A stretch of DNA of 64,000 nt, taken from positions 62,001 to 126,000 of IMG/VR virus record IMGVR_UViG_3300038465_000091; one strand, 5' to 3'. The notes under the pieces were generated by a model. That model did not search any database. It was not told where the DNA came from and saw only the letters and a program-made list of their open reading frames with translations. The number at the start of each line of letters is the position of its first letter. Position 1 is the first letter of the stretch. Position numbers and translations under genes: made by a program. This document shows, piece by piece, positions 1-61,467 of the stretch.

Positions 1-158
1 GTTAGCTGGCACGCTGTTCTTTGCAGTCCCGAACTTCCTCCCCTGCGCTCAACGCCGGACTTGGTTGGGTATTTCACATCAACACTGCCGATGCGAATCT
101 TACACGCTTCCAAGCACAGGACGTATATCTACGCAGCAGCGGTCGTCCAATTCAACAC
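1..158 (-). ncRNA. rnpB: RNase P RNA (bacterial type), 5' portion; 3' part lies beyond the window start
   Basis: Minus strand reads GTGTTGAATTGGACGACCGCTGCTGCG...GCGCAGGGGAGGAAGTTCGGGACTGCAAAGAACAGCGTGCCAGCTAAC. This is colinear with the conserved bacterial RNase P 5' region (E. coli-type ...GGGGAGGAAAGTCCGGGCTCCATAGGGCAGGGTGCCAGGTAAC). P3 is closed by CTGCG/CGCAG, and the gene follows the tRNA cluster. Confidence 0.85.
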
Positions 159-30021: not shown

Positions 30022-30662
30022 AGCGCCACGTCCAAATACGCCAAATCTTGGGCAAAATCGATATTTACAACCATGTGGGATTGAGAAGAATCACCCGATA
30101 CGGGTATGCCGGGGGCGGGAGGGCTTCCGTCTATTATGGCTGGCGCTTGATTCCCAGCGTCAGGTGTGTAGATGATGCTGATGATGCCATCGGCATACGA
30201 TAGGCCCGAGGGCGTGAATCCCTGAACCGCCAATGCGGGTGTGGGGAGGAACGCCGCATAGTTGTTACTCATCATGTATTGATCCGCAAGACCGAACGTC
30301 ATCCACATCCTCAACTGATCTGCCTGCGGGACGGGCGTACTTTGCTCCACAATCGTCATAGCTACGGGAGAAAGCAGTATTAGACCATAGGCGGGGAATG
30401 CTGCCTGAAAGTCACGTGAAGGTTGTGGTCCCTGAGTGACAGCACAGACGCTTGGGTTGGCAAGTTCCAAGTACCACGAGGCGTATATCGGATTTGTCGG
30501 CGGCGAACCAACCAACTGCTGTATCCCGTTGAGGTATAAAGTCCCATCGGCGGCGAAACCGTAGTGGTTGTTGGTCGTCGGGTTGTAGAAGGAGTCGTTG
30601 TTGTACGCCTGAATCAGCGTTGTTGCGACGATGTTCTGATCGAGGTAGTCGTAATTCGCCAT
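30018..30662 (-). CDS. Hypothetical virion-type protein (inverted orientation)
   Basis: 214 aa, AGGA RBS, composition like neighbouring structural proteins. Confidence 0.7.
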   Translation of the reverse strand: MANYDYLDQNIVATTLIQAYNNDSFYNPTTNNHYGFAADGTLYLNGIQQLVGSPPTNPIYASWYLELANPSVCAVTQGPQPSRDFQAAFPAYGLILLSPVAMTIVEQSTPVPQADQLRMWMTFGLADQYMMSNNYAAFLPTPALAVQGFTPSGLSYADGIISIIYTPDAGNQAPAIIDGSPPAPGIPVSGDSSQSHMVVNIDFAQDLAYLDVAL

Positions 30663-38100: not shown

Positions 38101-41100
38101 TGTTCATTTCCGCGTCTACGACTCAACTTCAAAGCGGTGCATCCATCCTCTTGCTCAACGGCGCACAGGCTGCGAATGTTGTCTGGGTGGTCGGAAGCTC
38201 CTTCACGCAGTTCGGCACGGCTGGCACAATGGTTGGTACTATTCTCGCTTACGCGAGTATCACCCTTGGTGGTGGGACATTAAACGGCAGGGCGCTAGCC
38301 GTAGGCGGCGGCAATGGGGCCGTGACCATCGCGGCTGCCGAAGCCATTACGGTATCGGCGGGCGCGGGTTCGCCATCAACCACAATTTACACCGCCGATT
38401 TGGGCACGTTCTCACCGTCCCTATCGGGCAACTTTACAGTTAGCGGGTTTGACTACACGGGAAACAACGGCACCTTCGCTATCGTGTCTAACACATCCAG
38501 CCAATTGATTCTGGCTAATCCAAATGGCTCGCCAACCCTTGACTCTATCGGCAGCCCGCCAATAGCCATCGGCACCGCCACTCAAGTAGCAATTGCGGTA
38601 CAGTCGGCGGCAAAGGCGTTGCAAGCAACAGCTTTGTCAAACGGCATCACGGTTGCTATCGACCCAGTAATCCCAGAGGTAGAATTTAGTGGTCCTCCGT
38701 CTGGAGTTTATGGCAACGTACAATACATGGTGCCTCTCCTGCTTCAATTGGCAGGTACCACCGTTGCTACGACCTCGCAAGTGTACACAGTACTAACGCA
38801 CGATGACGCGACACTCCTCGGTTGGGTGACGGGTACAGACATTGGAACGATAAGCACGGTCACACGCCCCTACGTTGTCGGGGAAGTGGTTGGTTTGAAC
38901 CCGCGTCAACCGTACTACAACTCGCCAGATGTTCCTCAGATTACCCCAACGAGCCCCGTACCGAGTGACGCTCCATGGATCGCCACGATGCCCATCACAG
39001 TGTCGGGCAATGCCCTACCATTGGGTCTTTCGCTCGATGCAAATACGGGGTTGATCTACGGGACACTCACGGGCGTGGCTACAGGTCCCAGTGTTATCCA
39101 ATACGTAGGTGCGATGGGCATAATCCACGGCACGGTGACCATCACTTGGAACACTGTAGTGAGTGCTTTCTCTCCGATTGATAACCTTCAGGATAGCGTG
39201 CCGCTTGGTACGATACTGAACAGGACAAGCAACACCAGCTATATAGCCGTACCTGCGGGAGTCACACCAGCATCGGCATCCATATACTACATAAGAGGCG
39301 CTGCTCAAGGGGCACTCCCAGCGGGCTTAACCCTTGACTCCACCCCAACGGGTCAGAATTTCTATATCACAGGCGCAGCCACAGAGAGTGGGTATTTTGA
39401 CGTTTGGTTTCAGGTGACCGCAAACACGGGCACCGCGTACTTGTACCATCGTATATCCATCGATTTTACCGCCCCGTTGACGATTGTAACTACATCACTG
39501 CCCAGTATTAGTCAACAGGCTTACTCCGCGCAAACACAGGGGTTTGGCGGCGTGCCTCCTTACACGTGGTCAGCGGTTTTCCCAGCAGGCGCGGCGGGGC
39601 TCAGTATCTCGCCATCCACGGGTATAATTTCAGGCACGCTGTCGTCTTTCCCTGTAATTAGCCCCACCGACTTCGACAACGTTGCAATTACTTTAACAGA
39701 CTTCCGAGGCTCCACCACTACAGCGCAGCTTGACCTCACGTACAATAACAGTTTGCGGCTTACGACGAACCGCATAGCGACCATTACCGACGATCTTAAC
39801 GGGTATTCGTTTCAAATGACGGCTGCGGGCGGCATAGCGCCGTACACTACATGGGCTGAGATTGGCACGCTGCCAACAGGCATCACGTTTAATGGCAGCA
39901 CGGGTTTGTTTTCGGGGGTTTATTCTGGTGCCACGGGATTAAGTTTTCCCATCACCATTGCAGTGACGGATAGTACACCCCTGACGACTGCACCCATACC
40001 ATTTACCATAACTACTGGCGGCTTGTCTGGAAGTATTAACGACAGCGGAGTAGGGCCTATCCCGCGTGGCGAAGCTTATCAAGGCACGCTTTCAACGGCG
40101 TGTATGACAACTCCTGTACAGTGGCAAGTTGCGCCTACCACCGGATATCCAAATCTTCTTCCTTCGGGGCTGTCATTACAAGTCAACGGCACGGGAGCAA
40201 CAGCAACGATTGCTGGCATTTATTCAGGTCCTATAATTCTGCCTACAAGTCCGTATCCAGTCAGGGTTATTGCGGTAGATAGTCTAGGCGATACGGCAGA
40301 GGCTATCGTAGAGTTCAGTACCGATACAAACCTGACCATCATCGGATGGGACTATGCGTTGTCCCCTATCGGCGTGCAGCCATTTCCGCTTCCCAACGCT
40401 GTTATTACTGGCAGCTATCCGCCGCCAAGCGGCGGTGGGATTCAGCTTGTAGCAATTCACGGCGTACCCTCGGGCGTACTGGCGAACGGATACAATCAGT
40501 ACGTTTGGAACACCATACCTTCAGGTCAGTTCCCATTCAATGGGATTTCGCTCTCCTCGACTGGCGTGCTCTCGGGCGCAGCTACGACGCTGTTTAGTCA
40601 GAGTTTTGACTTTGTGGTGTCGGATAGTCTCACACCGCCTAACACCGCCCCCCCAGTCACCACTACGTTTGCTTCGCAGACTTCGGCACTCGTTATCACC
40701 ACGTCATCGTTACCACAAGCAACCGCTGGCGTAGTGTACAACGGAACAGGGTTCCAACTGCAACAAACGGGAGCGGTGGGTTCCTTCACATTTTCCGTTG
40801 TCGGCGGCACCCTACCTTCAGGGCTTTCGTTGTCACCTACAGGTTTGATTACGGGCACTACGCTTCAGGTAGGAAGCACCCCCATCACGTTCCGTGTGAC
40901 GGACAGCACGTCGGCCTACTTCAACAGAACCTTGACGTTTACGGTTATTTCTGGGTTGGCGCTGAAGACGGGTATCGATTACGAGGATTCAACTGCGTAT
41001 GGCTACATCGGATATGTTGATACGGGCAACGTGGTTGGTATTGCACCGCGCACAAACCTGTCATTCTATGTGGTTGCAACGGGCGTAATTACCACCGATC

Positions 41101-55684: not shown

Positions 55685-55966
55685 GTGACTGAAAACATGC
55701 TTTCCTTTTGGCCCCACATTCCGTTCGCACACATAGCCAGTGCCGTCGCCGGCGGAATTCTGGGCTATCCGTTCAAGGCAGCTTGGGACTGGTGGATCGA
55801 GACGTTCTGGATCGGCTTCAAGCTGGGTATCAAAGAATCGGAAGGCGGCAGGCGACTCATAGCGGCTTTTAATCAAGGCAAAGCCGAGGCGGAAGCGAGG
55901 ACTCTGGCGAAGCATCCCGAACTCAAGTCTGCACTCGACGAAATACACGCGAAAGAGGCCCAGTAA
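55685..55966 (+). CDS. Small membrane protein
   Basis: Hydrophobic N-terminal half. Confidence 0.55.
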   Translation: MTENMLSFWPHIPFAHIASAVAGGILGYPFKAAWDWWIETFWIGFKLGIKESEGGRRLIAAFNQGKAEAEARTLAKHPELKSALDEIHAKEAQ

Positions 55967-56112
55967 TGGCATTTTTCAAACGGTTCGCAGCGAAGGTCAA
56001 CGAAGAGGATAACGTCGTCTGCACTGCGGAAGAAGTTGACGAAGTGGTGAAAGACCGCAAGAAGCGGAAGAAGAAAAAGAAGGAAGACGATTCCTCGGAC
56101 ACCGATTCCTAA
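55966..56112 (+). CDS. Small basic/acidic protein (48 aa)
   Basis: TAATG coupling; MAFFKRFAAKV...KKRKKKKKEDD. Confidence 0.5.
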   Translation: MAFFKRFAAKVNEEDNVVCTAEEVDEVVKDRKKRKKKKKEDDSSDTDS

Positions 56113-56140
56113 AATCGCTCCCGCCGCAGTATTAGACCCT

Positions 56141-57013
56141 ATGGACAATGTAGAATGCGGGGATAGTTTAGCGGTAAAACAGCCGACCCAATCGGAAATC
56201 GGGGGTTCAAATCCAGCCTCTCCGCTCCAATCTGCACGCCAACTTGCCGAGCAACGATTCAAGACCAATCCAGTAATGTGTTTCCAGCGACATCTAATTG
56301 AAGCTTCCGCCGAGCTTAATCCTCGGGAAAAATACCCTAAAGAATTCCTGCTTCACGAAGGTGTGCGGGAGATCACTCGTGCTGAGTGTGCGACATTCAT
56401 TGAGCAGTATGAATACCTCGGCACCCTCGGTCGCGGTAGCGTGTACTACGGGTTGTTCATGCCGAATGGCGAGATGGTTGGGGCCAACTGCTTCTGCACA
56501 AGTGGCGGCGGGATTGGGAACATTTGTGGGCCTGAGTACGCGGGTAAGACCGCTAACCTAGCCCGTGGGTGTTGTGTCCTCCACGCCCCCGTCAACGCGG
56601 GCTCGTTCTTTACTGCTCGTTCAATCAAGATGGCGTATGCGAAATACGGATGGCAAGTGTACTTTGCTTACAGTGACCCCAACGCCAGTGAGAACGGCAA
56701 GCTTTACAAAATCCTGAACTGGTACTATCTTGGCGCGGGCCTCAACCATAGTGGCGGGCATAGTGACTGGTATAAGGACGGCAACAGGATCAAAAGCTAC
56801 GCCGTGTTCCGCGATGGCGGCAAGGCCCTAGTGAAGTACGGCTATGAGCCGGGCACAGGCGGGCAATGGGCGTGGCTGCGAGCTAATGGTTGGGAGCAGA
56901 GAATTGATCCCGACAAAGGGAAATTCTGCTGGTTTGAGGGCAACAAACGCGAAGTACGAGCCGCAAAAGCGGCGTGTCGCTACCCCCTTGATCTACCATT
57001 CCCAGAAAAATAA
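56141..57013 (+). CDS. mom: Mom-like (GNAT-fold) DNA adenine modification protein
   Basis: VREI...FIEQYEYLG...YYGLF...LARGCC...PVNAGSFF...AYSDP...GKLYK..NWYYLG. Confidence 0.75.
   Translation: MDNVECGDSLAVKQPTQSEIGGSNPASPLQSARQLAEQRFKTNPVMCFQRHLIEASAELNPREKYPKEFLLHEGVREITRAECATFIEQYEYLGTLGRGSVYYGLFMPNGEMVGANCFCTSGGGIGNICGPEYAGKTANLARGCCVLHAPVNAGSFFTARSIKMAYAKYGWQVYFAYSDPNASENGKLYKILNWYYLGAGLNHSGGHSDWYKDGNRIKSYAVFRDGGKALVKYGYEPGTGGQWAWLRANGWEQRIDPDKGKFCWFEGNKREVRAAKAACRYPLDLPFPEK
56157..56229 (+). ncRNA. tRNA-Gly-like element embedded in frame in the 5' end of the mom-like gene
   Basis: GCGGGGA/TCTCCGC acceptor, U73, CCA; D-arm GTTT-AGCGGTA-AAAC; T-loop GGTTCAAATCC; shortened anticodon arm CCGA-CCCAA-TCGG. 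Confidence 0.8.
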
Positions 57014-58193: not shown

Positions 58194-58241
58194 GTGGTGT
58201 TATTTCATTCGTCTCGGCGTATTATGTAGGAAGGAGATTTT

Positions 58242-58460
58242 ATGCAGCGGCATCGACGGTGTGGAGAGCACAGGAAATTTGCCTCACAAAAAGAGGCTGA
58301 TGAAGAGTTAGGCAAGGTTGCGTTGTGGGGAATGAGACGCGGGGGCGACACGTGGCGGTTGCTCAAGGTGTTCCCCTGCGGGGATCATTGGCACATCGGC
58401 AGGGATTGGGCGTCGAAGTTTATGCTTCCCGAAGACAAATCTGTTGGAAAGTCAGTTTAG
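58242..58460 (+). CDS. Small hypothetical protein (C...C..HWH)
   Basis: AAGGAG RBS; upstream promoter motif. Confidence 0.65.
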   Translation: MQRHRRCGEHRKFASQKEADEELGKVALWGMRRGGDTWRLLKVFPCGDHWHIGRDWASKFMLPEDKSVGKSV

Positions 58461-59290
58461 GGTCGTCCCGGATAGCCGTTACGCGGTTTGCCCTCACCTA
58501 ACCGCACCCGCTCATACTTATCGAACTCACAAAGGCAATTCTGGAGGTCCTGCATGTGGATTTCCGGCATACCCACGTTGGCGACCAATGGTTTGATCTG
58601 CCGCCGCAGGTCGAGCATGGTGTCTAACCACATTGACTCTTGCCAGCTTTGATCCACGGGGTAATTCATGACGCGATTCAACCCGCGTTTACTGCCCGGT
58701 CCGCTGCACGCCCAGTCCGACCAATCCACACAGTTTTCAAGTAGGTAGGTGTATTTCGTGTCGCACACGATTTGTCCCCCGAGAAAGCTGCCCAAGCCGT
58801 TAAACTCGGTCAGACGTTTGTGGAAGGTCGCAAGGCTCCACGCTTCTTCGGTGATGTAGTCGCGTTGACACCAAAGAGGGTTGAGAACTTCGCTGGCGAG
58901 ATACCTCGCCTTGGATGCAAATCCTGCCTTTGCGGGTACGATGTAGACGCCCGTGAAGACTTTCTCTTTCGCCTGCTTGCGGCGTTCGAGCACTTCGACG
59001 AAATGCATCGGGTCAAACGGGACGGGGTAGCCAAGCTCTTCGAGCGTGTCGGGCCAATTTACGAGACGGGCGACTGCCATCGCAAACCATACCTCAGGTT
59101 CATCAACGTGTGGTTGACGCCAGTTCTTGGCAATCCACTGCGTCACCTTGTCAAGTTCACGATACACGTTGCAGAAACGATAGGCTTGCAGGATGGGGTC
59201 TTCTGTCCAAGGTTTCGGGTACCCAGCGGTTTTGGCTTCGTAGATCGCGTGCCGTTCGGTGATCCATGCAAAAAGGGCTTCAATTCTCAT
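58457..59290 (-). CDS. Amino acid:DNA transferase-like protein (aGPT-PPlase1 / 5-hmdU kinase helical-domain family; thymidine hypermodification)
   Basis: ERHAIY......PKPWTEDPILQAYRFCNVYRELDKVT...NWP...FTGVY...GLGSFLGGQIVCD...GPGSKRGL...QNCLCEFDKY. Confidence 0.85.
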   Translation of the reverse strand: MRIEALFAWITERHAIYEAKTAGYPKPWTEDPILQAYRFCNVYRELDKVTQWIAKNWRQPHVDEPEVWFAMAVARLVNWPDTLEELGYPVPFDPMHFVEVLERRKQAKEKVFTGVYIVPAKAGFASKARYLASEVLNPLWCQRDYITEEAWSLATFHKRLTEFNGLGSFLGGQIVCDTKYTYLLENCVDWSDWACSGPGSKRGLNRVMNYPVDQSWQESMWLDTMLDLRRQIKPLVANVGMPEIHMQDLQNCLCEFDKYERVRLGEGKPRNGYPGRP

Positions 59291-59350
59291 CTTTTCAATA
59301 ATACCACAATTCTCTTCACTTTCGACTATATTACTGAGGACCTTTTCCTG

Positions 59351-61069
59351 ATGAACCCGCTTTTCCAGAAAAAGACAAACGACGAACAAGACCCCATCAT
59401 CCTGCCGCAAGATGATAACCAGCAAGGGGATATGCTCGATCCAGCTACCCAACAAGTTGTCGCTCCACCGCCCGTAGCTCCCGCCGAGGATGAGAAAGTC
59501 GTCGAACAGAGTCGGATGGCAGCCCAGAAAAGCGCGGCTGCTCATACCCCATGGGATGTCTACCTTCGAGGGAAATGGGTCAATCGTGTTTTTACGGTGC
59601 CGAACATGACTGCCGACGACGTGAAGCGTGGTCTGGTAGATCATGATGGTCTCAACCCAGCCATTGAAGTGCGGTCTGGACAGGGGCGAAACGTCCCGGG
59701 TAGTGTCCCACTCAATCGGATAGGCTCCAACCCCCTACTTCAAAAAAGGGGTGCGGGTGCACCTATTGGCATGGATCAGGATCAGCAGACCTGTCGCAGA
59801 TGCAAACAGCCGATTCAACAGGGCCAAATGGTTTCGTGGGAAAGTGGTAGTGAGACTCACGCGGGCGTCTGTCCACCTCCACCCCCAACCGCCGTAAAGG
59901 AGCAGAGCCGTCTCATGTTTCCTAAGGGGTATGAGCCAAAGCAACCGCCAACGGCCCCCCAGCGGCCCCAGAAGCCCCCTACGCAGCCCCAGTACGCTTC
60001 GGCTGAGAAAGTAGCCACACGACGTAAGATCAGCGGCTACGTGCCCGCCACAAGCTGGGGCGTACCGCAGGAATGCGCTCATCAAGTTGCCCATGCCCTT
60101 GCCAACGCGGGTGTGCGTGATTTTGACGTGGCGACGGACGAAAAACTGCATGTGGCATACTTTTCATTCGGCAACGAGGTCGAGATGGAGGTCAGCGCAG
60201 ATATTGTTTGTGAATACTTTGGTCCTCAGATCGCCGCATCCAAGGGCAAATGGATTGGTTGGCAGTGCCGTCCCGAGCGCCAACCGAGAGTGCCTGACGT
60301 GAACATGCCACTGAGCAAGATGAATAGCAAGCGGGCTGGCAGCCAAGGCACCCGTGAAGCCGTCGCCAAGTTGCAAAGACTCGGCATCAAGACTACGGCG
60401 GACCTCGACAAATGGATCAAGGAGCACCCGAAGACTGAGACCAAGGGACCCTACGCGGGCTCGCGGTCGCTCATGAGCCGTTACGACGCCCTGAACGAGC
60501 TTGTGGGCACCTTCGCCGCCACGTGGATTCTACACGATTTGGCGACCGACGCCGCTGTTAGGGAAGGGCTCCCCAAGAGAGGATTCTTCTCCCCCGAGGA
60601 TGCCAAGCGGTTCCGCGACGACAATCAGGGCAGCAACGTCGCTTTGAATCAGGATGAAGAGGGCAGCCAACTGTGGGAGAAAGTGCCCGATAACGAGTTA
60701 CTTAGGAAGAAAGAGGGGGCGGTTCCGCCTCCCCCACCTCAGCCGCCAGCTTCGCATGTCAGGGAAGCACCAGCACCTCGCAAACCCGCCCCGCCGCAGG
60801 GTTCGCCGAATGTCACCTTTCCATCGGACATGCCTGACATTTATATTGGAGGTGAGCCGCCACGAGGCGCACCAGCGGATTTCGGTGGGGCTGTCTTCCC
60901 CAATCCAAAGGGGTTAGCGCCAACGCTGGATACAGCCCCGCCTCCACCTCGGCCTGAGCTTAATGCAACCCATGAAATGGGCGTATATAAGGGCGATATG
61001 AAAATGGACATGACCAATGCAGACGTGTCGGACGTGGTGCCAAACCCATTGCAGCCCCGTGAACAGTAA
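59351..61069 (+). CDS. Proline-rich modular protein (probable head-associated protein)
   Basis: GAGG RBS then MNPLFQKK; short domains separated by low-complexity linkers. Confidence 0.7.
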   Translation: MNPLFQKKTNDEQDPIILPQDDNQQGDMLDPATQQVVAPPPVAPAEDEKVVEQSRMAAQKSAAAHTPWDVYLRGKWVNRVFTVPNMTADDVKRGLVDHDGLNPAIEVRSGQGRNVPGSVPLNRIGSNPLLQKRGAGAPIGMDQDQQTCRRCKQPIQQGQMVSWESGSETHAGVCPPPPPTAVKEQSRLMFPKGYEPKQPPTAPQRPQKPPTQPQYASAEKVATRRKISGYVPATSWGVPQECAHQVAHALANAGVRDFDVATDEKLHVAYFSFGNEVEMEVSADIVCEYFGPQIAASKGKWIGWQCRPERQPRVPDVNMPLSKMNSKRAGSQGTREAVAKLQRLGIKTTADLDKWIKEHPKTETKGPYAGSRSLMSRYDALNELVGTFAATWILHDLATDAAVREGLPKRGFFSPEDAKRFRDDNQGSNVALNQDEEGSQLWEKVPDNELLRKKEGAVPPPPPQPPASHVREAPAPRKPAPPQGSPNVTFPSDMPDIYIGGEPPRGAPADFGGAVFPNPKGLAPTLDTAPPPPRPELNATHEMGVYKGDMKMDMTNADVSDVVPNPLQPREQ

Positions 61070-61120
61070 GAAGTTAAATATTCCTAGCCAAAATCCTCAG
61101 ACTTCTGGTATCATGTAATA

Positions 61121-61390
61121 GATGGTCGTAAGCCCCGCAAGGGGTAAAAGGCACTGGTACTGATTTTCAGACAGGGGTTCGACTCCCCTCAGGTCCACCA
61201 TAAATTTTTGCACCACCTTATGGGCCTGCCCCGGTTTCGATGGAGACGGTATGGGATGGCAGCCAGCGACCCGAGCGCAAGGGTGTACCCTCGTTAAACA
61301 GGCATTCAAAAAAGTAAACGCTGAAGCTCCAAAGGCTTTCGCTGCTCATGCTTAATGAGCCAGACCCCGTGGGTCTGTTCCTCAACACGG
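61121..61390 (+). ncRNA. ssrA: Circularly permuted two-piece tmRNA; tag (A)AEAPKAFAAHA
   Basis: Acceptor piece ends ...GACAGGGGTTCGACTCCCCTCAGGTCCACCA (61200). A 21-nt spacer follows, then the coding piece starts GGGCCTG (61222), which pairs with CAGGTCC (G3:U70). Tag ORF at 61320-61355 follows GTAAAC. Outer boundaries are approximate. Confidence 0.9.
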
Positions 61391-61396
61391 CAAGAA

Positions 61397-61422
61397 CGCC
61401 CGCGCAAGCGGGCATTTTTGTT
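61397..61422 (+). terminator. Intrinsic terminator after tmRNA
   Basis: GCCCGC-GCAA-GCGGGC-ATTTTTG. Confidence 0.8.
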
Positions 61423-61467
61423 TCTGGTTGACAATCTGAATTCCAAAGGCTAGTATAGGGGCACATT

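What the first reader, a model, noticed from the sequence alone, without database searches (positions are those of the whole stretch)
56110..57013. tRNA-Gly mimic encoded in frame inside the 5' end of a Mom-like DNA-modification gene
Seen: 16 nt after the start of the mom-like ORF, nucleotides 56157-56229 fold as a cloverleaf. It has G1-C72, C2-G71, G3-C70, U73 and CCA (bacterial GlyRS acceptor identity elements) and recognisable D and T loops. The anticodon arm is shrunken (CCGA-CCCAA-TCGG) and the T stem is distorted, so it is unlikely to decode. The same bases are read in frame as CGDSLAVKQPTQSEIGGSNPASPLQ. A promoter-like motif (AAAATC...AGTATTAG) lies 5 nt before the ATG, suggesting a leaderless mRNA. 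Established: Mu Mom makes N6-carbamoylmethyl (glycinamide-type) adenine, and GNAT/Fem-fold enzymes can use aminoacyl-tRNA donors. I recall reports that Gly-tRNA-Gly is the Mom donor, which should be verified. Inference: the gene carries either its own ribosome-orthogonal glycyl donor RNA or an autoregulatory decoy. Excising it with RNase P (which this phage also encodes) would destroy the mRNA start and so couple donor supply to enzyme level.
Basis: partly seen in the sequence, partly recalled or inferred. Interest (0 to 1): 0.88.

Follow-up and report, generated by a model that had tools for sequence, protein, structure and literature searches.

The report
tRNA-Gly look-alike inside mom genes
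A conserved glycine-tRNA look-alike is written, in frame, into the first codons of a phage DNA-modification gene (mom) whose enzyme family uses glycyl-tRNA as its substrate, and the same arrangement recurs in many distantly related mom genes, so one transcript may supply both the enzyme and its private glycine carrier.

Summary
Window 56157-56229 (+) is a 73-nt tRNA-Gly-like cloverleaf lying 16 nt after the ATG of a Mom-family ORF (56141-57013) and read in frame. On its own it is sub-threshold (Rfam tRNA 26 bits against a gathering score of 29; ARAGORN silent). I found 26 distinct homologous elements, all at the 5' end of mom genes or just before a Mom domain, always in an open frame. They come from uncultured phages and Acidobacteriota genomes whose Mom domains are only 27-45% identical.

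Across the 26 sequences, 96.8% of cells are paired and 13 of 21 pairs carry compensatory changes; slid controls give 46-56% paired. Invariant features are G1-C72, C2-G71, G3-C70, U73, CCA, two Cs followed by A in the anticodon loop, and a bulged nucleotide in the T stem. Anticodon loops are 4-8 nt; only one element (L072) allows a 7-nt reading. One branch has UGC in the T loop, like staphylococcal non-proteogenic tRNA-Gly. A close relative (L003) lacks the element through a precise 81-nt in-frame deletion.

Mu Mom uses Gly-tRNA-Gly (Silva 2026), and this phage encodes RNase P RNA. My best model is a ribosome-shunning glycine donor excised from a bifunctional mom transcript. A purely cis-regulatory tRNA mimic is the main rival. 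I found no prior report.

The parts
56127..56137 (+). Conserved -10-like motif CAGTATTAGAC, ending 3 nt before the ATG. It is a possible promoter for a leaderless or near-leaderless mom transcript.
   Evidence: AGTATTA is invariant in window, L003, L004-L007 and L010/L016, and is similar in L018, L033 and L072. An exact second copy lies at 30375 and a one-mismatch copy at 39503. The promoter role is inferred.
56141..57013 (+). The mom ORF (290 codons plus stop), starting at ATG 56141 and read through the tRNA-like element.
   Evidence: The same ATG is used in L003, which lacks the element and lacks Met46. There is no in-frame start between the element and 56276.
56157..56229 (+). The tRNA-Gly-like element, 73 nt including U73-CCA.
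   Evidence: Rfam tRNA 26 bits. CM R1 and 26-member family with covariation.
56157..56163 (+). Acceptor stem, 5' strand (GCGGGGA).
   Evidence: It pairs with 56219-56225. Pairs 1-3 are invariant and pairs 4-7 covary in the family.
56166..56180 (+). D arm: stem GUUU/AAAC with loop AGCGGUA, which contains GG.
   Evidence: Three of four pairs show compensatory changes. GG in the D loop goes with UUC in the T loop; D loops without GG go with UGC.
56183..56195 (+). Shortened anticodon arm: 4 bp plus the 5-nt loop CCCAA (56187-56191).
   Evidence: The stem covaries across the family. Loop size is 4-8 nt, and CC followed by A is always present.
56201..56218 (+). T arm: GGGGG, loop UUCAAAU, then CCAGCC, with a G56203.A56215 mismatch and a bulged G56216.
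   Evidence: The bulge after position 63 is present in all 26 members. Pair 51-63 occurs as C-G, U-A, A-U, G-U or G.A. The bulge is absent from the phage's canonical tRNA-Gly genes.
56219..56229 (+). Acceptor stem 3' strand (UCUCCGC), discriminator U73 and the encoded CCA.
   Evidence: CGCUCCA is invariant in all 26 members.
56230..56275 (+). Coding segment between the element and Met46, an N-terminal extension of the type-A Mom.
   Evidence: It is conserved as protein in L003 and L007, with mostly synonymous differences.
56276..56278 (+). Internal ATG (Met46), chosen as the start by automatic gene callers (P0001, 245 aa).
   Evidence: L003 has AAG (Lys) at this position.
56363..56743 (+). Core of the Mom (GNAT-fold) domain matched by Pfam PF25680.
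   Evidence: hhalign against the type-B profile aligns the catalytic Ser motif.
1..86 (-). 5' part of a phage-encoded bacterial class A RNase P RNA. It is context for the proposed 5' processing of the element.
   Evidence: the full copy is L113:5068-5413, 139 bits. Its action on the element is inferred.

Best explanation
Window 56157-56229 belongs to a previously undescribed family of tRNA-Gly-derived RNAs embedded in frame at the 5' end of mom genes. Mom is the GNAT-fold enzyme that transfers glycine from Gly-tRNA-Gly to N6 of adenine in DNA. I propose that the mom transcript is bifunctional.

Read as mRNA, it is translated from the ATG 16 nt upstream of G1, straight through the element. The element contributes only a disordered N-terminal tail, and translation continues into the Mom domain.

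Read as a tRNA precursor, it is cut at G1 (by RNase P; this phage encodes its own RNase P RNA) and trimmed to the encoded CCA. This releases a ~73-nt RNA. That RNA keeps everything bacterial GlyRS needs but cannot decode and should bind EF-Tu poorly. Once charged, it would serve Mom as a private glycine donor outside translation. This is the same logic as the non-proteogenic tRNA-Gly that feeds the Fem transferases in staphylococci. Each processing event also destroys one mom mRNA, which ties donor output to enzyme output and caps a toxic enzyme.

Shown here: the RNA structure is under selection; the GlyRS determinants are invariant; the anticodon loop and T stem are non-canonical; the frame is kept open; and the association with Mom persists across deep divergence and across a swap of the mom cassette. 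Inferred: processing, glycylation, use by Mom, and poor EF-Tu and ribosome binding.
For: 1. Structure under selection. 26 distinct elements give 96.8% paired cells and 13/21 pairs with compensatory changes, against 46-56% paired when partners are slid. RNAalifold agrees. D-loop GG with T-loop UUC versus no GG with UGC looks like a tertiary covariation. The whole L-shape is therefore maintained, not just a hairpin.

2. GlyRS determinants. G1-C72, C2-G71, G3-C70, U73 and CCA are invariant. Position 4-69 is purine-pyrimidine in 22/26. CC followed by A is present in every anticodon loop. The published identity set is G1C72, C2G71, C35, C36 and U73, with a purine-4/pyrimidine-69 preference and a requirement for the whole L-shape (PMC10464925).

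3. Features against decoding. Loops are 4-8 nt, and only one element (L072) allows a 7-nt reading. A bulged nucleotide in the T stem is universal and is absent from the phage's canonical tRNA-Gly genes. One branch has UGC instead of UUC, as in the S. aureus non-proteogenic tRNA-Gly that bind EF-Tu weakly (PMC7826273).

4. Link to the enzyme. Mu Mom uses Gly-tRNA-Gly and reads the tRNA body or acceptor end, since Gly-tRNA-Ala is rejected (PMC13219725). The element accompanies Mom domains that are only 27-45% identical. It also stays in place when a type-B mom body is exchanged for a type-A one, with the homology breakpoint at the element's 3' end.

5. The peptide is a passenger. AF2 gives pLDDT below 50 for the element-coded residues 1-30, and the first strand starts right after CCA. 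Variability shows no 3-nt periodicity. L003 lacks the peptide altogether.

6. Processing is plausible. The phage encodes RNase P RNA and at least 13 tRNAs, all with encoded CCA and A/U-rich trailers. In L032 and L118 a sigma70-like promoter ends 6-7 nt before G1, so the transcript would start at the mature 5' end.

7. Cases that argue against simple start-codon occlusion. In L019 and L020 the element lies deep inside long ORFs. In L031 it lies 220 nt upstream of mom.
Against: There is no direct evidence of processing, charging or use by Mom. Excision necessarily destroys the mRNA. In L019 and L020 it would also cut a multi-domain ORF in two, which is awkward for an efficient donor pathway.

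Mu Mom works with all ordinary tRNA-Gly isoacceptors, and most Mom genes lack the element (69 of 95 loci). L003 lost it and kept mom. A private donor is therefore not required.

The distorted anticodon loops might weaken GlyRS recognition of C35 and C36. The window copy has a G.A mismatch in its T stem and no significant folding z-score. The window phage already carries canonical tRNA-Gly(GCC) and tRNA-Gly(UCC).
Confidence: 0.45

Rival explanations
1. The element is a purely cis-acting tRNA mimic. It is never released or charged. It folds next to or over the start region and is bound by Mom itself (autogenous repression, as ThrRS does on the thrS operator), by GlyRS, or is cut by RNase P. The effect is to throttle translation of a toxic enzyme or to couple it to the state of the glycyl-tRNA pool.
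For: The start codon always lies 2-16 nt upstream of G1 or inside the D loop. In L032, L017 and L118 the Shine-Dalgarno GGAGG is the acceptor 5' strand itself, so the tRNA fold and initiation are mutually exclusive. Mom recognises tRNA-Gly. Mu mom is known for elaborate translational control. This model avoids the problem that excision destroys the mRNA.
Against: A hairpin would suffice for occlusion. Here the whole L-shape, CC-A in the anticodon loop and the CCA are conserved. In L019 and L020 no start codon lies within 79 to more than 900 nt of the element, and in L031 the element is detached from mom. In the window the ATG is 16 nt upstream, largely outside the fold. This model does not explain the features that should keep the RNA away from EF-Tu and the ribosome.
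Confidence: 0.3
2. The element is a decoy or shield against host defences that act on tRNA-Gly or on charged tRNA, such as anticodon nucleases or GNAT toxins that acetylate Gly-tRNA-Gly. It would keep Mom supplied or soak up the effector.
For: Phages often carry tRNAs to counter tRNA-targeting defences (general knowledge). The altered anticodon loops would escape anticodon nucleases. The element keeps the acceptor features that GNAT toxins read (discussion of PMC13219725).
Against: This model does not explain the strict physical coupling to mom or the in-frame position. No defence or counter-defence gene context was seen. It is a refinement of the donor model rather than an independent one.
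Confidence: 0.08
3. The element is a decoding tRNA with unusual loops, for example a frameshift or quadruplet suppressor used for phage recoding.
For: ARAGORN reads 2-nt or 4-nt 'anticodons' in several members, and an 8-nt loop resembles sufD-type suppressors.
Against: Homologous elements have loops of 4, 5, 6 and 8 nt, so no single decoding geometry is conserved. The universal T-stem bulge, and UGC T loops in one branch, argue against use by EF-Tu and the ribosome. Canonical tRNA-Gly genes exist in the same phage.
Confidence: 0.04
4. The element is a neutral or selfish relic: a tRNA pseudogene, an attachment-site remnant or a recombination hotspot that happens to be open in the mom frame, possibly with the conserved peptide as the true target of selection.
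For: A canonical tRNA-Gly is naturally open in this frame (my reading of L075). The mom cassette breakpoint coincides with the element. L003 lost the element without losing mom.
Against: The massive compensatory covariation cannot be explained by protein-level or neutral evolution. The peptide is predicted disordered, and variability shows no codon periodicity. The identity nucleotides are invariant over Mom divergence of more than one substitution per site. No integrase is adjacent in the window.
Confidence: 0.04

Closest known systems
Non-proteogenic tRNA-Gly of Staphylococcus aureus and S. epidermidis, the donors for the FmhB/FemA/FemB peptidoglycan transferases
   Same: Both are tRNA-Gly variants that keep GlyRS identity but carry changes expected to exclude them from EF-Tu and the ribosome. 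One branch of the present family even shares UGC for UUC in the T loop and a D loop without GG. Both would feed a non-ribosomal glycyl transferase.
   Different: The staphylococcal tRNAs are stand-alone host genes with normal-length arms. The present element is phage or prophage borne and lies inside the ORF of the transferase itself. It is translated in frame, has an anticodon loop of 4-8 nt (5 nt in the window), and always has a bulged T stem. Its charging and use are unproven.
tmRNA (SsrA)
   Same: It is a single RNA combining a tRNA-like, aminoacylatable domain with a translated reading frame. The same phage also carries a permuted tmRNA.
   Different: In tmRNA the tRNA-like domain is not translated. 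Its identity is alanine, it works on the ribosome with SmpB, and it is not linked to an aminoacyl-tRNA-dependent transferase.
tRNA-mimicking operators in mRNA leaders (E. coli thrS operator; T-box leaders)
   Same: These are RNA structures at the 5' end of an mRNA that exploit tRNA recognition to control expression of a tRNA-handling enzyme.
   Different: Those operators mimic only an anticodon arm, or bind a tRNA in trans. They are untranslated and carry no acceptor stem with CCA. The present element is a complete cloverleaf inside the coding sequence.
Aminoacylatable tRNA-like structures (TLS) of plant RNA viruses
   Same: These are virus-encoded tRNA mimics charged by host synthetases and not used for decoding.
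   Different: They sit at the 3' end of RNA genomes, are pseudoknot based, have Val, His or Tyr identity, are not in an ORF and are not donors for an enzyme.
Phage Mu com-mom translational control
   Same: It is a structured RNA at the mom start region that limits translation of a cytotoxic Mom.
   Different: Mu uses a simple hairpin opened by the Com protein. Nothing tRNA-like is described there, and I found no mention in PMC13219725.
tRNA-mRNA co-transcripts (the thrU-tyrU-glyT-thrT-tufB operon; mitochondrial tRNA punctuation)
   Same: A tRNA and an mRNA are made from one precursor and separated by RNase P and 3' processing.
   Different: In those cases the tRNA lies outside the ORF, so processing liberates a functional mRNA. 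Here processing would remove the start codon or N-terminus.

Membership tests
tRNA (Rfam RF00005 / canonical elongator tRNA) | Score at or above the curated gathering threshold, or detection by a tRNA finder | tested here: not met
   The window copy scores 26 bits against a GA of 29 and ARAGORN is silent. Some relatives are called, but with 2-nt or 4-nt 'anticodons' or as 'Trp'.
tRNA (Rfam RF00005 / canonical elongator tRNA) | Four-helix cloverleaf supported by covariation | tested here: met
   96.8% of cells are paired and 13/21 pairs are compensatory, including all four helices. RNAalifold agrees.
tRNA (Rfam RF00005 / canonical elongator tRNA) | 7-nt anticodon loop with U33, and a regular 5-bp T stem | tested here: not met
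   The window has a 5-nt loop (CCCAA). Loops across the family are 4-8 nt. A bulged nucleotide after position 63 is present in all 26 members.
Substrate of bacterial (alpha2beta2) GlyRS | G1-C72, C2-G71, (G3-C70), U73 and a CCA end | tested here: met
   These are invariant in 26/26 members. The identity set is taken from PMC10464925.
Substrate of bacterial (alpha2beta2) GlyRS | C35 and C36 presented in an anticodon loop; an overall L-shape | tested here: inconclusive
   CC followed by A is present in every loop, and the D-loop/T-loop partners co-vary. The loop geometry is abnormal, so recognition cannot be judged from sequence.
Substrate of bacterial (alpha2beta2) GlyRS | Free 3' CCA end and actual glycylation | not testable with these tools
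   This needs RNA end mapping and an in-vitro charging assay.
Non-proteogenic tRNA-Gly (staphylococcal type) | UGC or UGU instead of UUC in the T loop, and a D loop lacking G18G19 | tested here: not met
   The window copy has UUCAAAU and a D loop with GG. The feature is met only in branch b and in L017 (PMC7826273).
Non-proteogenic tRNA-Gly (staphylococcal type) | Weak EF-Tu binding and preferential use by a non-ribosomal transferase | not testable with these tools
   This is inferred only, from the T-stem bulge and mismatch.
Mom family (PF25680; Mu Mom, PDB 8bv8) | Significant match to the family profile | tested here: met
   The window ORF scores 35.8 bits against a cutoff of 27.1, and hhalign to the type-B profile gives 94.9% probability. 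The type-B profile hits 8bv8 at E 4.7e-18, and Foldseek's top hit is 8bv8 at E 2e-10.
Mom family (PF25680; Mu Mom, PDB 8bv8) | Catalytic Ser (S124 of Mu) and Arg (R111 of Mu) | tested here: inconclusive
   Both residues are invariant in the type-B alignment (ELNR and ES motifs). Mapping them onto Mu R111 and S124 rests on my inferred numbering offset in the 8bv8 chain. In the window protein the Ser aligns (NAGSFF). The Arg (ANLARG) falls in a gapped part of the alignment.
Mom family (PF25680; Mu Mom, PDB 8bv8) | Glycyl transfer from Gly-tRNA-Gly to adenine N6 in dsDNA | not testable with these tools
   This needs nucleoside LC-MS and an enzyme assay.
Autoregulatory tRNA-mimic operator (thrS type) | Overlaps the ribosome-binding region and is bound by the encoded enzyme | tested here: inconclusive
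   The start codon lies 2-16 nt upstream of G1 or in the D loop in most members, and SD GGAGG lies within the acceptor strand in L017, L032 and L118. L019, L020 and L031 break the rule. Binding is not testable here.

The most novel reading that the evidence does not exclude
The mom 5' region is a truly bifunctional tRNA/mRNA: a translated, in-frame tRNA gene. Its excised product is charged by host GlyRS and consumed, off the ribosome, by the very enzyme encoded downstream on the same transcript. Translation and tRNA maturation are mutually exclusive fates that set the enzyme-to-donor ratio. This would be the first virus-encoded non-ribosomal aminoacyl carrier and the first tRNA nested in the ORF of its own client enzyme.
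Probability: 0.35. Interest if true: 0.95.

Novelty: new variant of a known kind. Interest (0 to 1): 0.88.

Why it matters
That Mom uses Gly-tRNA-Gly was established only recently (Silva et al., preprint 2023, paper 2026). Nothing is known about how phages secure that substrate or restrain a cytotoxic enzyme outside Mu. This element gives a concrete, testable handle. It is a covarying RNA family, below the thresholds of standard tRNA finders and annotated as coding sequence. It keeps glycine identity while shedding the decoding features.

If it is a donor, it extends the idea of 'non-proteogenic' tRNAs from one bacterial genus to viruses and to DNA modification, and it provides a naturally ribosome-orthogonal GlyRS substrate. 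If it is a regulator, it is a full-length tRNA mimic inside a coding sequence.

Either way it shows that tRNA genes can be nested in frame within ORFs and persist there. Gene callers mis-start these genes: here at Met46, and elsewhere at a D-loop ATG. tRNA scanners also miss such elements. The recognisable peptide signature (GG-S/A-x-P...L-Q/H just before the first Mom strand) offers a simple way to find more.

Tried and rejected
- **DNA similarity to 50,697 GenBank phages:** none.
- **Cultured phages whose tblastn match seemed to reach the N-terminal peptide:** Mycobacterium phage Ohno789, Microbacterium phage Lupine and Bacillus phage BC-6 have no element by CM with filters off, by ARAGORN or by eye. 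No cultured model system was found.
- **Single-sequence folding:** the z-score is not significant, so thermodynamics alone cannot support the element.
- **Codon periodicity of variability in the element:** weak (0.57/0.63/0.79). This gives no evidence for protein-level selection.
- **Microhomology at the L003 deletion junction:** none obvious.
- **The 11-mer CAGTATTAGAC as a phage promoter:** there is a second exact copy and a one-mismatch copy. One lies inside a minus-strand ORF and the other inside a 2070-aa ORF, and Rfam finds nothing downstream. This is left as unproven.
- **Is the element a recent copy of the phage's own tRNA-Gly?** No. The canonical phage tRNA-Gly genes share only general tRNA-Gly features and lack the bulge and the short loop.
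- **Complementary presence of tRNA-Gly(CCC):** it is absent from the cluster of the window phage and present in the element-free relative. The sample is only n=2, and a further scan found one uninformative contig.
- **Attachment-site or integrase explanation:** no integrase flanks the window copy, and the element is not a canonical host tRNA.
- **Ascertainment bias in the pattern scans:** the scans required the anticodon arm, so invariance of that arm within the closest group is partly due to ascertainment. The wider set was collected by Mom protein similarity and does not have that bias.
Full report
**What is in the window.**
- The ORF 56141-57013 (+) encodes 290 aa. It matches Pfam Mom PF25680 at 35.8 bits (cutoff 27.1), but only over residues 75-201.
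- Sixteen nucleotides after the A of its ATG, positions 56157-56229 read as a cloverleaf:
  - a 7-bp acceptor stem beginning G1-C72, C2-G71, G3-C70;
  - a D arm GUUU/AAAC with GG in its loop;
  - an anticodon arm of 4 bp with the 5-nt loop CCCAA;
  - a T arm GGGGG-UUCAAAU-CCAGCC, with one mismatch and one extra nucleotide;
  - then U73 and CCA.
- Rfam's tRNA model scores the element at 26 bits (gathering 29), E 0.008 locally and 0.39 over the whole window.
- ARAGORN does not call it, and the folding energy is unremarkable (z -0.46). Taken alone, the element is only suggestive.

**Relatives make it decisive.**
- The same contig (IMG/VR 3300038465_000091, 223.5 kb) and two others carry identical copies.
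- L007 has a Mom 79% identical to the window's. It carries the element at the same place and in the same frame, with compensatory changes at acceptor pairs 6-67 and 7-66 and at D-stem pair 11-24.
- L003 has a Mom 85% identical. It uses the same ATG but lacks the element through a precise 81-nt in-frame gap. It has Lys where the window has Met46.
- The segment between the element and Met46 is conserved as protein in L003 and L007, and no in-frame start codon lies between the element and Met46. The window gene must therefore be translated from 56141 through the element. The 245-aa gene call that starts at Met46 (P0001) is probably wrong.

**A second, very different Mom carries the same element.**
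- P0004 and P0005 (318 aa, PF25680) align to the window protein only over the first 33 residues, which are the translated element.
- Their contigs, together with L010 and L016, share the window's upstream gene, the motif before the ATG and the element. They then diverge completely.
- blastn shows synteny up to window 56233-56239, the 3' end of the element, resuming near 58212-58242. The mom body has been swapped (type A versus type B) while the element was retained.

**The family is large.**
- Searching with the type-B Mom body alone gave 228 homologues. 34 of the 83 listed homologues with complete N-termini begin with a peptide that is a translated tRNA D arm, T arm and acceptor end, running directly into the first strand of the Mom domain.
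- Fetching 95 Mom loci by protein similarity and scanning them with a covariance model built from the window group found an element at the 5' edge of the Mom domain in 26 loci. Six are Acidobacteriota genome loci and 20 are viral contigs.
- Two more distant Moms found by the exhaustive profile search also carry it.
- In all there are 26 distinct sequences.
- ARAGORN calls some of them as tRNA-Gly(tcc), 'Trp(cca)', or tRNAs with 2-nt or 4-nt anticodons.
- The remaining 69 Mom loci start conventionally.
- On a Mom-domain tree, the element-bearing genes make up 21 of 30 members of one strongly supported clade, plus a separate small clade. At least 4-5 gains or losses are needed, and branch lengths between groups exceed one change per site.
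- The profile search finds about 3,500 representatives of the Mom family at 50% clustering. The element therefore marks a minority of the family, but a deep one.

**The RNA structure is under selection.**
- On the 26-sequence alignment (A8), the cloverleaf has 96.8% of cells paired.
- 13 of 21 pairs have changes on both sides (105 cells).
- The covariation score is 0.52, against 0.16 in shuffles (0/500 reach it). With partners slid, paired cells fall to 46-56% and the score to 0.09-0.12.
- Acceptor pairs 4-7, three D-stem pairs, all five anticodon-stem pairs and T-stem pair 51-63 all covary.
- D loops with GG go with UUC T loops. D loops without GG go with UGC T loops. This suggests that the tertiary elbow is maintained.

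**What is invariant and what is free.**
- Invariant: G1-C72, C2-G71, G3-C70, U73, CCA, the T-stem G-C pairs, and two Cs followed by A in the anticodon loop.
- These are the published determinants of bacterial GlyRS (G1C72, C2G71, C35, C36, U73). The enzyme also needs the whole L-shape (PMC10464925).
- Free: the size of the anticodon loop, which is 4, 5, 6 or 8 nt. Only one member (L072) allows a 7-nt reading.
- Always abnormal: a bulged nucleotide in the 3' strand of the T stem. The phage's own canonical tRNA-Gly genes lack it.
- One branch replaces UUC by UGC in the T loop. The same change marks the non-proteogenic tRNA-Gly of S. aureus, which bind EF-Tu poorly and feed the Fem transferases (PMC7826273).
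- The pattern is that of an RNA selected to be recognised as tRNA-Gly at its acceptor end and by GlyRS, but released from decoding.

**Translation through the element.**
- In all 24 sequences tabulated, the mom frame is open across the element, while the other frames contain stops.
- The nearest ATG lies at -16, -15, -13, -10 or -2 relative to G1, or at +14 in the D loop. In L120, found later, it lies at -7.
- In L032 and L066, in-frame stops lie just upstream of G1, so initiation must be at the D-loop ATG. In L118 the start is a D-loop GTG.
- In L017, L032 and L118 the acceptor 5' strand contains GGAGG, 7 nt before that start codon. In L032 and L118 a sigma70-like promoter ends 6-7 nt before G1 (11/12 match in L032).
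- L018 (72 nt) and L036 (74 nt) read the 5' half in other frames. L018 has C9 instead of A9, which removes the TAG that would otherwise stop its frame.
- In L019 and L020 the element lies in the middle of long ORFs (542 and 838 aa) that string together two or three Mom paralogues.
- The encoded peptide is a passenger. AlphaFold2 on the type-B alignment gives pLDDT below 50 for residues 1-30 and starts the fold at residue 33, right after the CCA. Variability shows no clear codon periodicity. L003 does without the peptide.

**Context.**
- The type-B profile matches the crystal structure of Mu Mom (8bv8, E 4.7e-18), with the ELNR arginine and ES serine conserved. The predicted fold's best PDB match is also 8bv8.
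- Silva et al. 2026 show that Mu Mom transfers glycine from Gly-tRNA-Gly to adenine N6. It accepts all three E. coli isoacceptors and rejects Gly-tRNA-Ala.
- The window phage carries a class A RNase P RNA, whose 5' end is window 1-86(-), a cluster of at least 13 tRNA genes that includes canonical tRNA-Gly(GCC) and tRNA-Gly(UCC), and a permuted tmRNA.
- All five of its tRNA genes that lie within the window encode CCA followed by an A/U-rich trailer.
- Genome hits place the lineage in Acidobacteriota.

**Interpretation.**
- Firmly supported: the element is a conserved, structurally constrained tRNA-Gly derivative, co-inherited with Mom and translated as part of its ORF.
- My preferred mechanism (confidence about 0.45): a fraction of transcripts is processed to a free ~73-nt RNA. 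GlyRS charges it, and Mom uses it as an EF-Tu-independent glycine donor. Processing simultaneously inactivates that mRNA.
- Main rival (about 0.3): a purely cis-acting tRNA mimic that limits or tunes translation, through Mom, GlyRS or RNase P.
- The two are not exclusive.
- For a trans-acting product: the whole L-shape and the anticodon Cs are conserved, the features that should exclude EF-Tu and the ribosome are present, and in some members the element is far from any start codon.
- Against it: excision costs the mRNA; ordinary tRNA-Gly suffices for Mu Mom; most Mom genes, and L003, do without the element.
- Minor rivals (decoding or suppressor tRNA, defence decoy, neutral relic or peptide function) are listed with their evidence.

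**Novelty.**
- Full-text searches found no description of a tRNA-like element in mom genes. The Mom papers do not mention one.
- Dedicated non-ribosomal tRNA-Gly, tRNA-mimic operators, viral TLS and tmRNA are known kinds. The in-frame nesting of a complete, covarying tRNA in the ORF of its presumptive client enzyme is, as far as I can tell, new.

**Limits.**
- There are no expression data, no cultured phage with the element, and no biochemical test.
- The closest group was partly collected with a pattern that fixed the anticodon arm.
- The promoter assignment in the window is an inference.

Noticed in passing
window 1-86 (-); full copy L113:5068-5413 (-): The phage encodes a full-length bacterial class A RNase P RNA (139 bits; 165 bits in the relative L112). 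It is embedded in a cluster of at least 13 tRNA genes, directly next to tRNA-Gly(UCC) and tRNA-Gly(GCC).
   Followed up: partly
window 61104-61446 (+): A permuted (two-piece type) tmRNA with tag peptide AEAPKAFAAHA. The homologous stretch in L003 (95% identical over 122 nt) is called tRNA-Thr by ARAGORN, probably the tRNA-like piece of the same gene.
   Followed up: no
window 58457-59644 (-): The ORF matches the 5-hmdU DNA kinase helical domain (PF18723, E 5e-49). The phage therefore seems to combine a thymidine hypermodification pathway with Mom-type adenine modification within 1.5 kb.
   Followed up: no
window 30375-30385 and 39503-39513 (+): The 11-mer CAGTATTAGAC found before the mom ATG recurs exactly at 30375 and with one mismatch at 39503 (about 0.03 exact copies expected by chance). 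Both extra copies lie inside ORFs, so it is unclear whether this is a promoter.
   Followed up: partly
L019:1607-3235, L020:1439-3955, L022; proteins P0127 and P0244: In Acidobacteriaceae genomes, two or three different Mom paralogues are strung in one uninterrupted ORF, with the tRNA-like element as the linker before the type-B domain. P0244 carries the tRNA-coded signature at its C end.
   Followed up: partly
L062:5298-5370 (-), L075:3551-3624 (-), L079:5307-5378 (-): Element-free mom genes with a canonical tRNA-Gly(UCC) 1-3 kb downstream on the other strand. Their Moms form the sister clade of one element-bearing group, which hints at a looser mom/tRNA-Gly association.
   Followed up: partly
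L113:4666-5061 versus L112:2979-3468: The window phage (element present) has tRNA-Gly GCC and UCC but no CCC gene at the syntenic spot. The relative without the element (the contig of L003) has CCC, GCC and UCC. The pattern is complementary, but the sample is n=2.
   Followed up: partly
L021:2442-2506: A Mom subgroup with N-termini like MSECGLRR... may carry a decayed 65-nt derivative of the element: acceptor-like GTGGTTT/AACCCAC followed by TCCA. The covariance model does not detect it.
   Followed up: no
L031:2178-2249: A diverged copy of the element (30 bits; loop GUCCA; bulged T stem) lies about 220 nt upstream of its mom gene in another reading frame. It is detached from the start codon.
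   Followed up: no
window 55966-56112 (+): A small upstream ORF (48 aa) with a KKRKKKKK tract and an acidic tail is conserved in all relatives together with the motif and the element. Its function is unknown.
   Followed up: no
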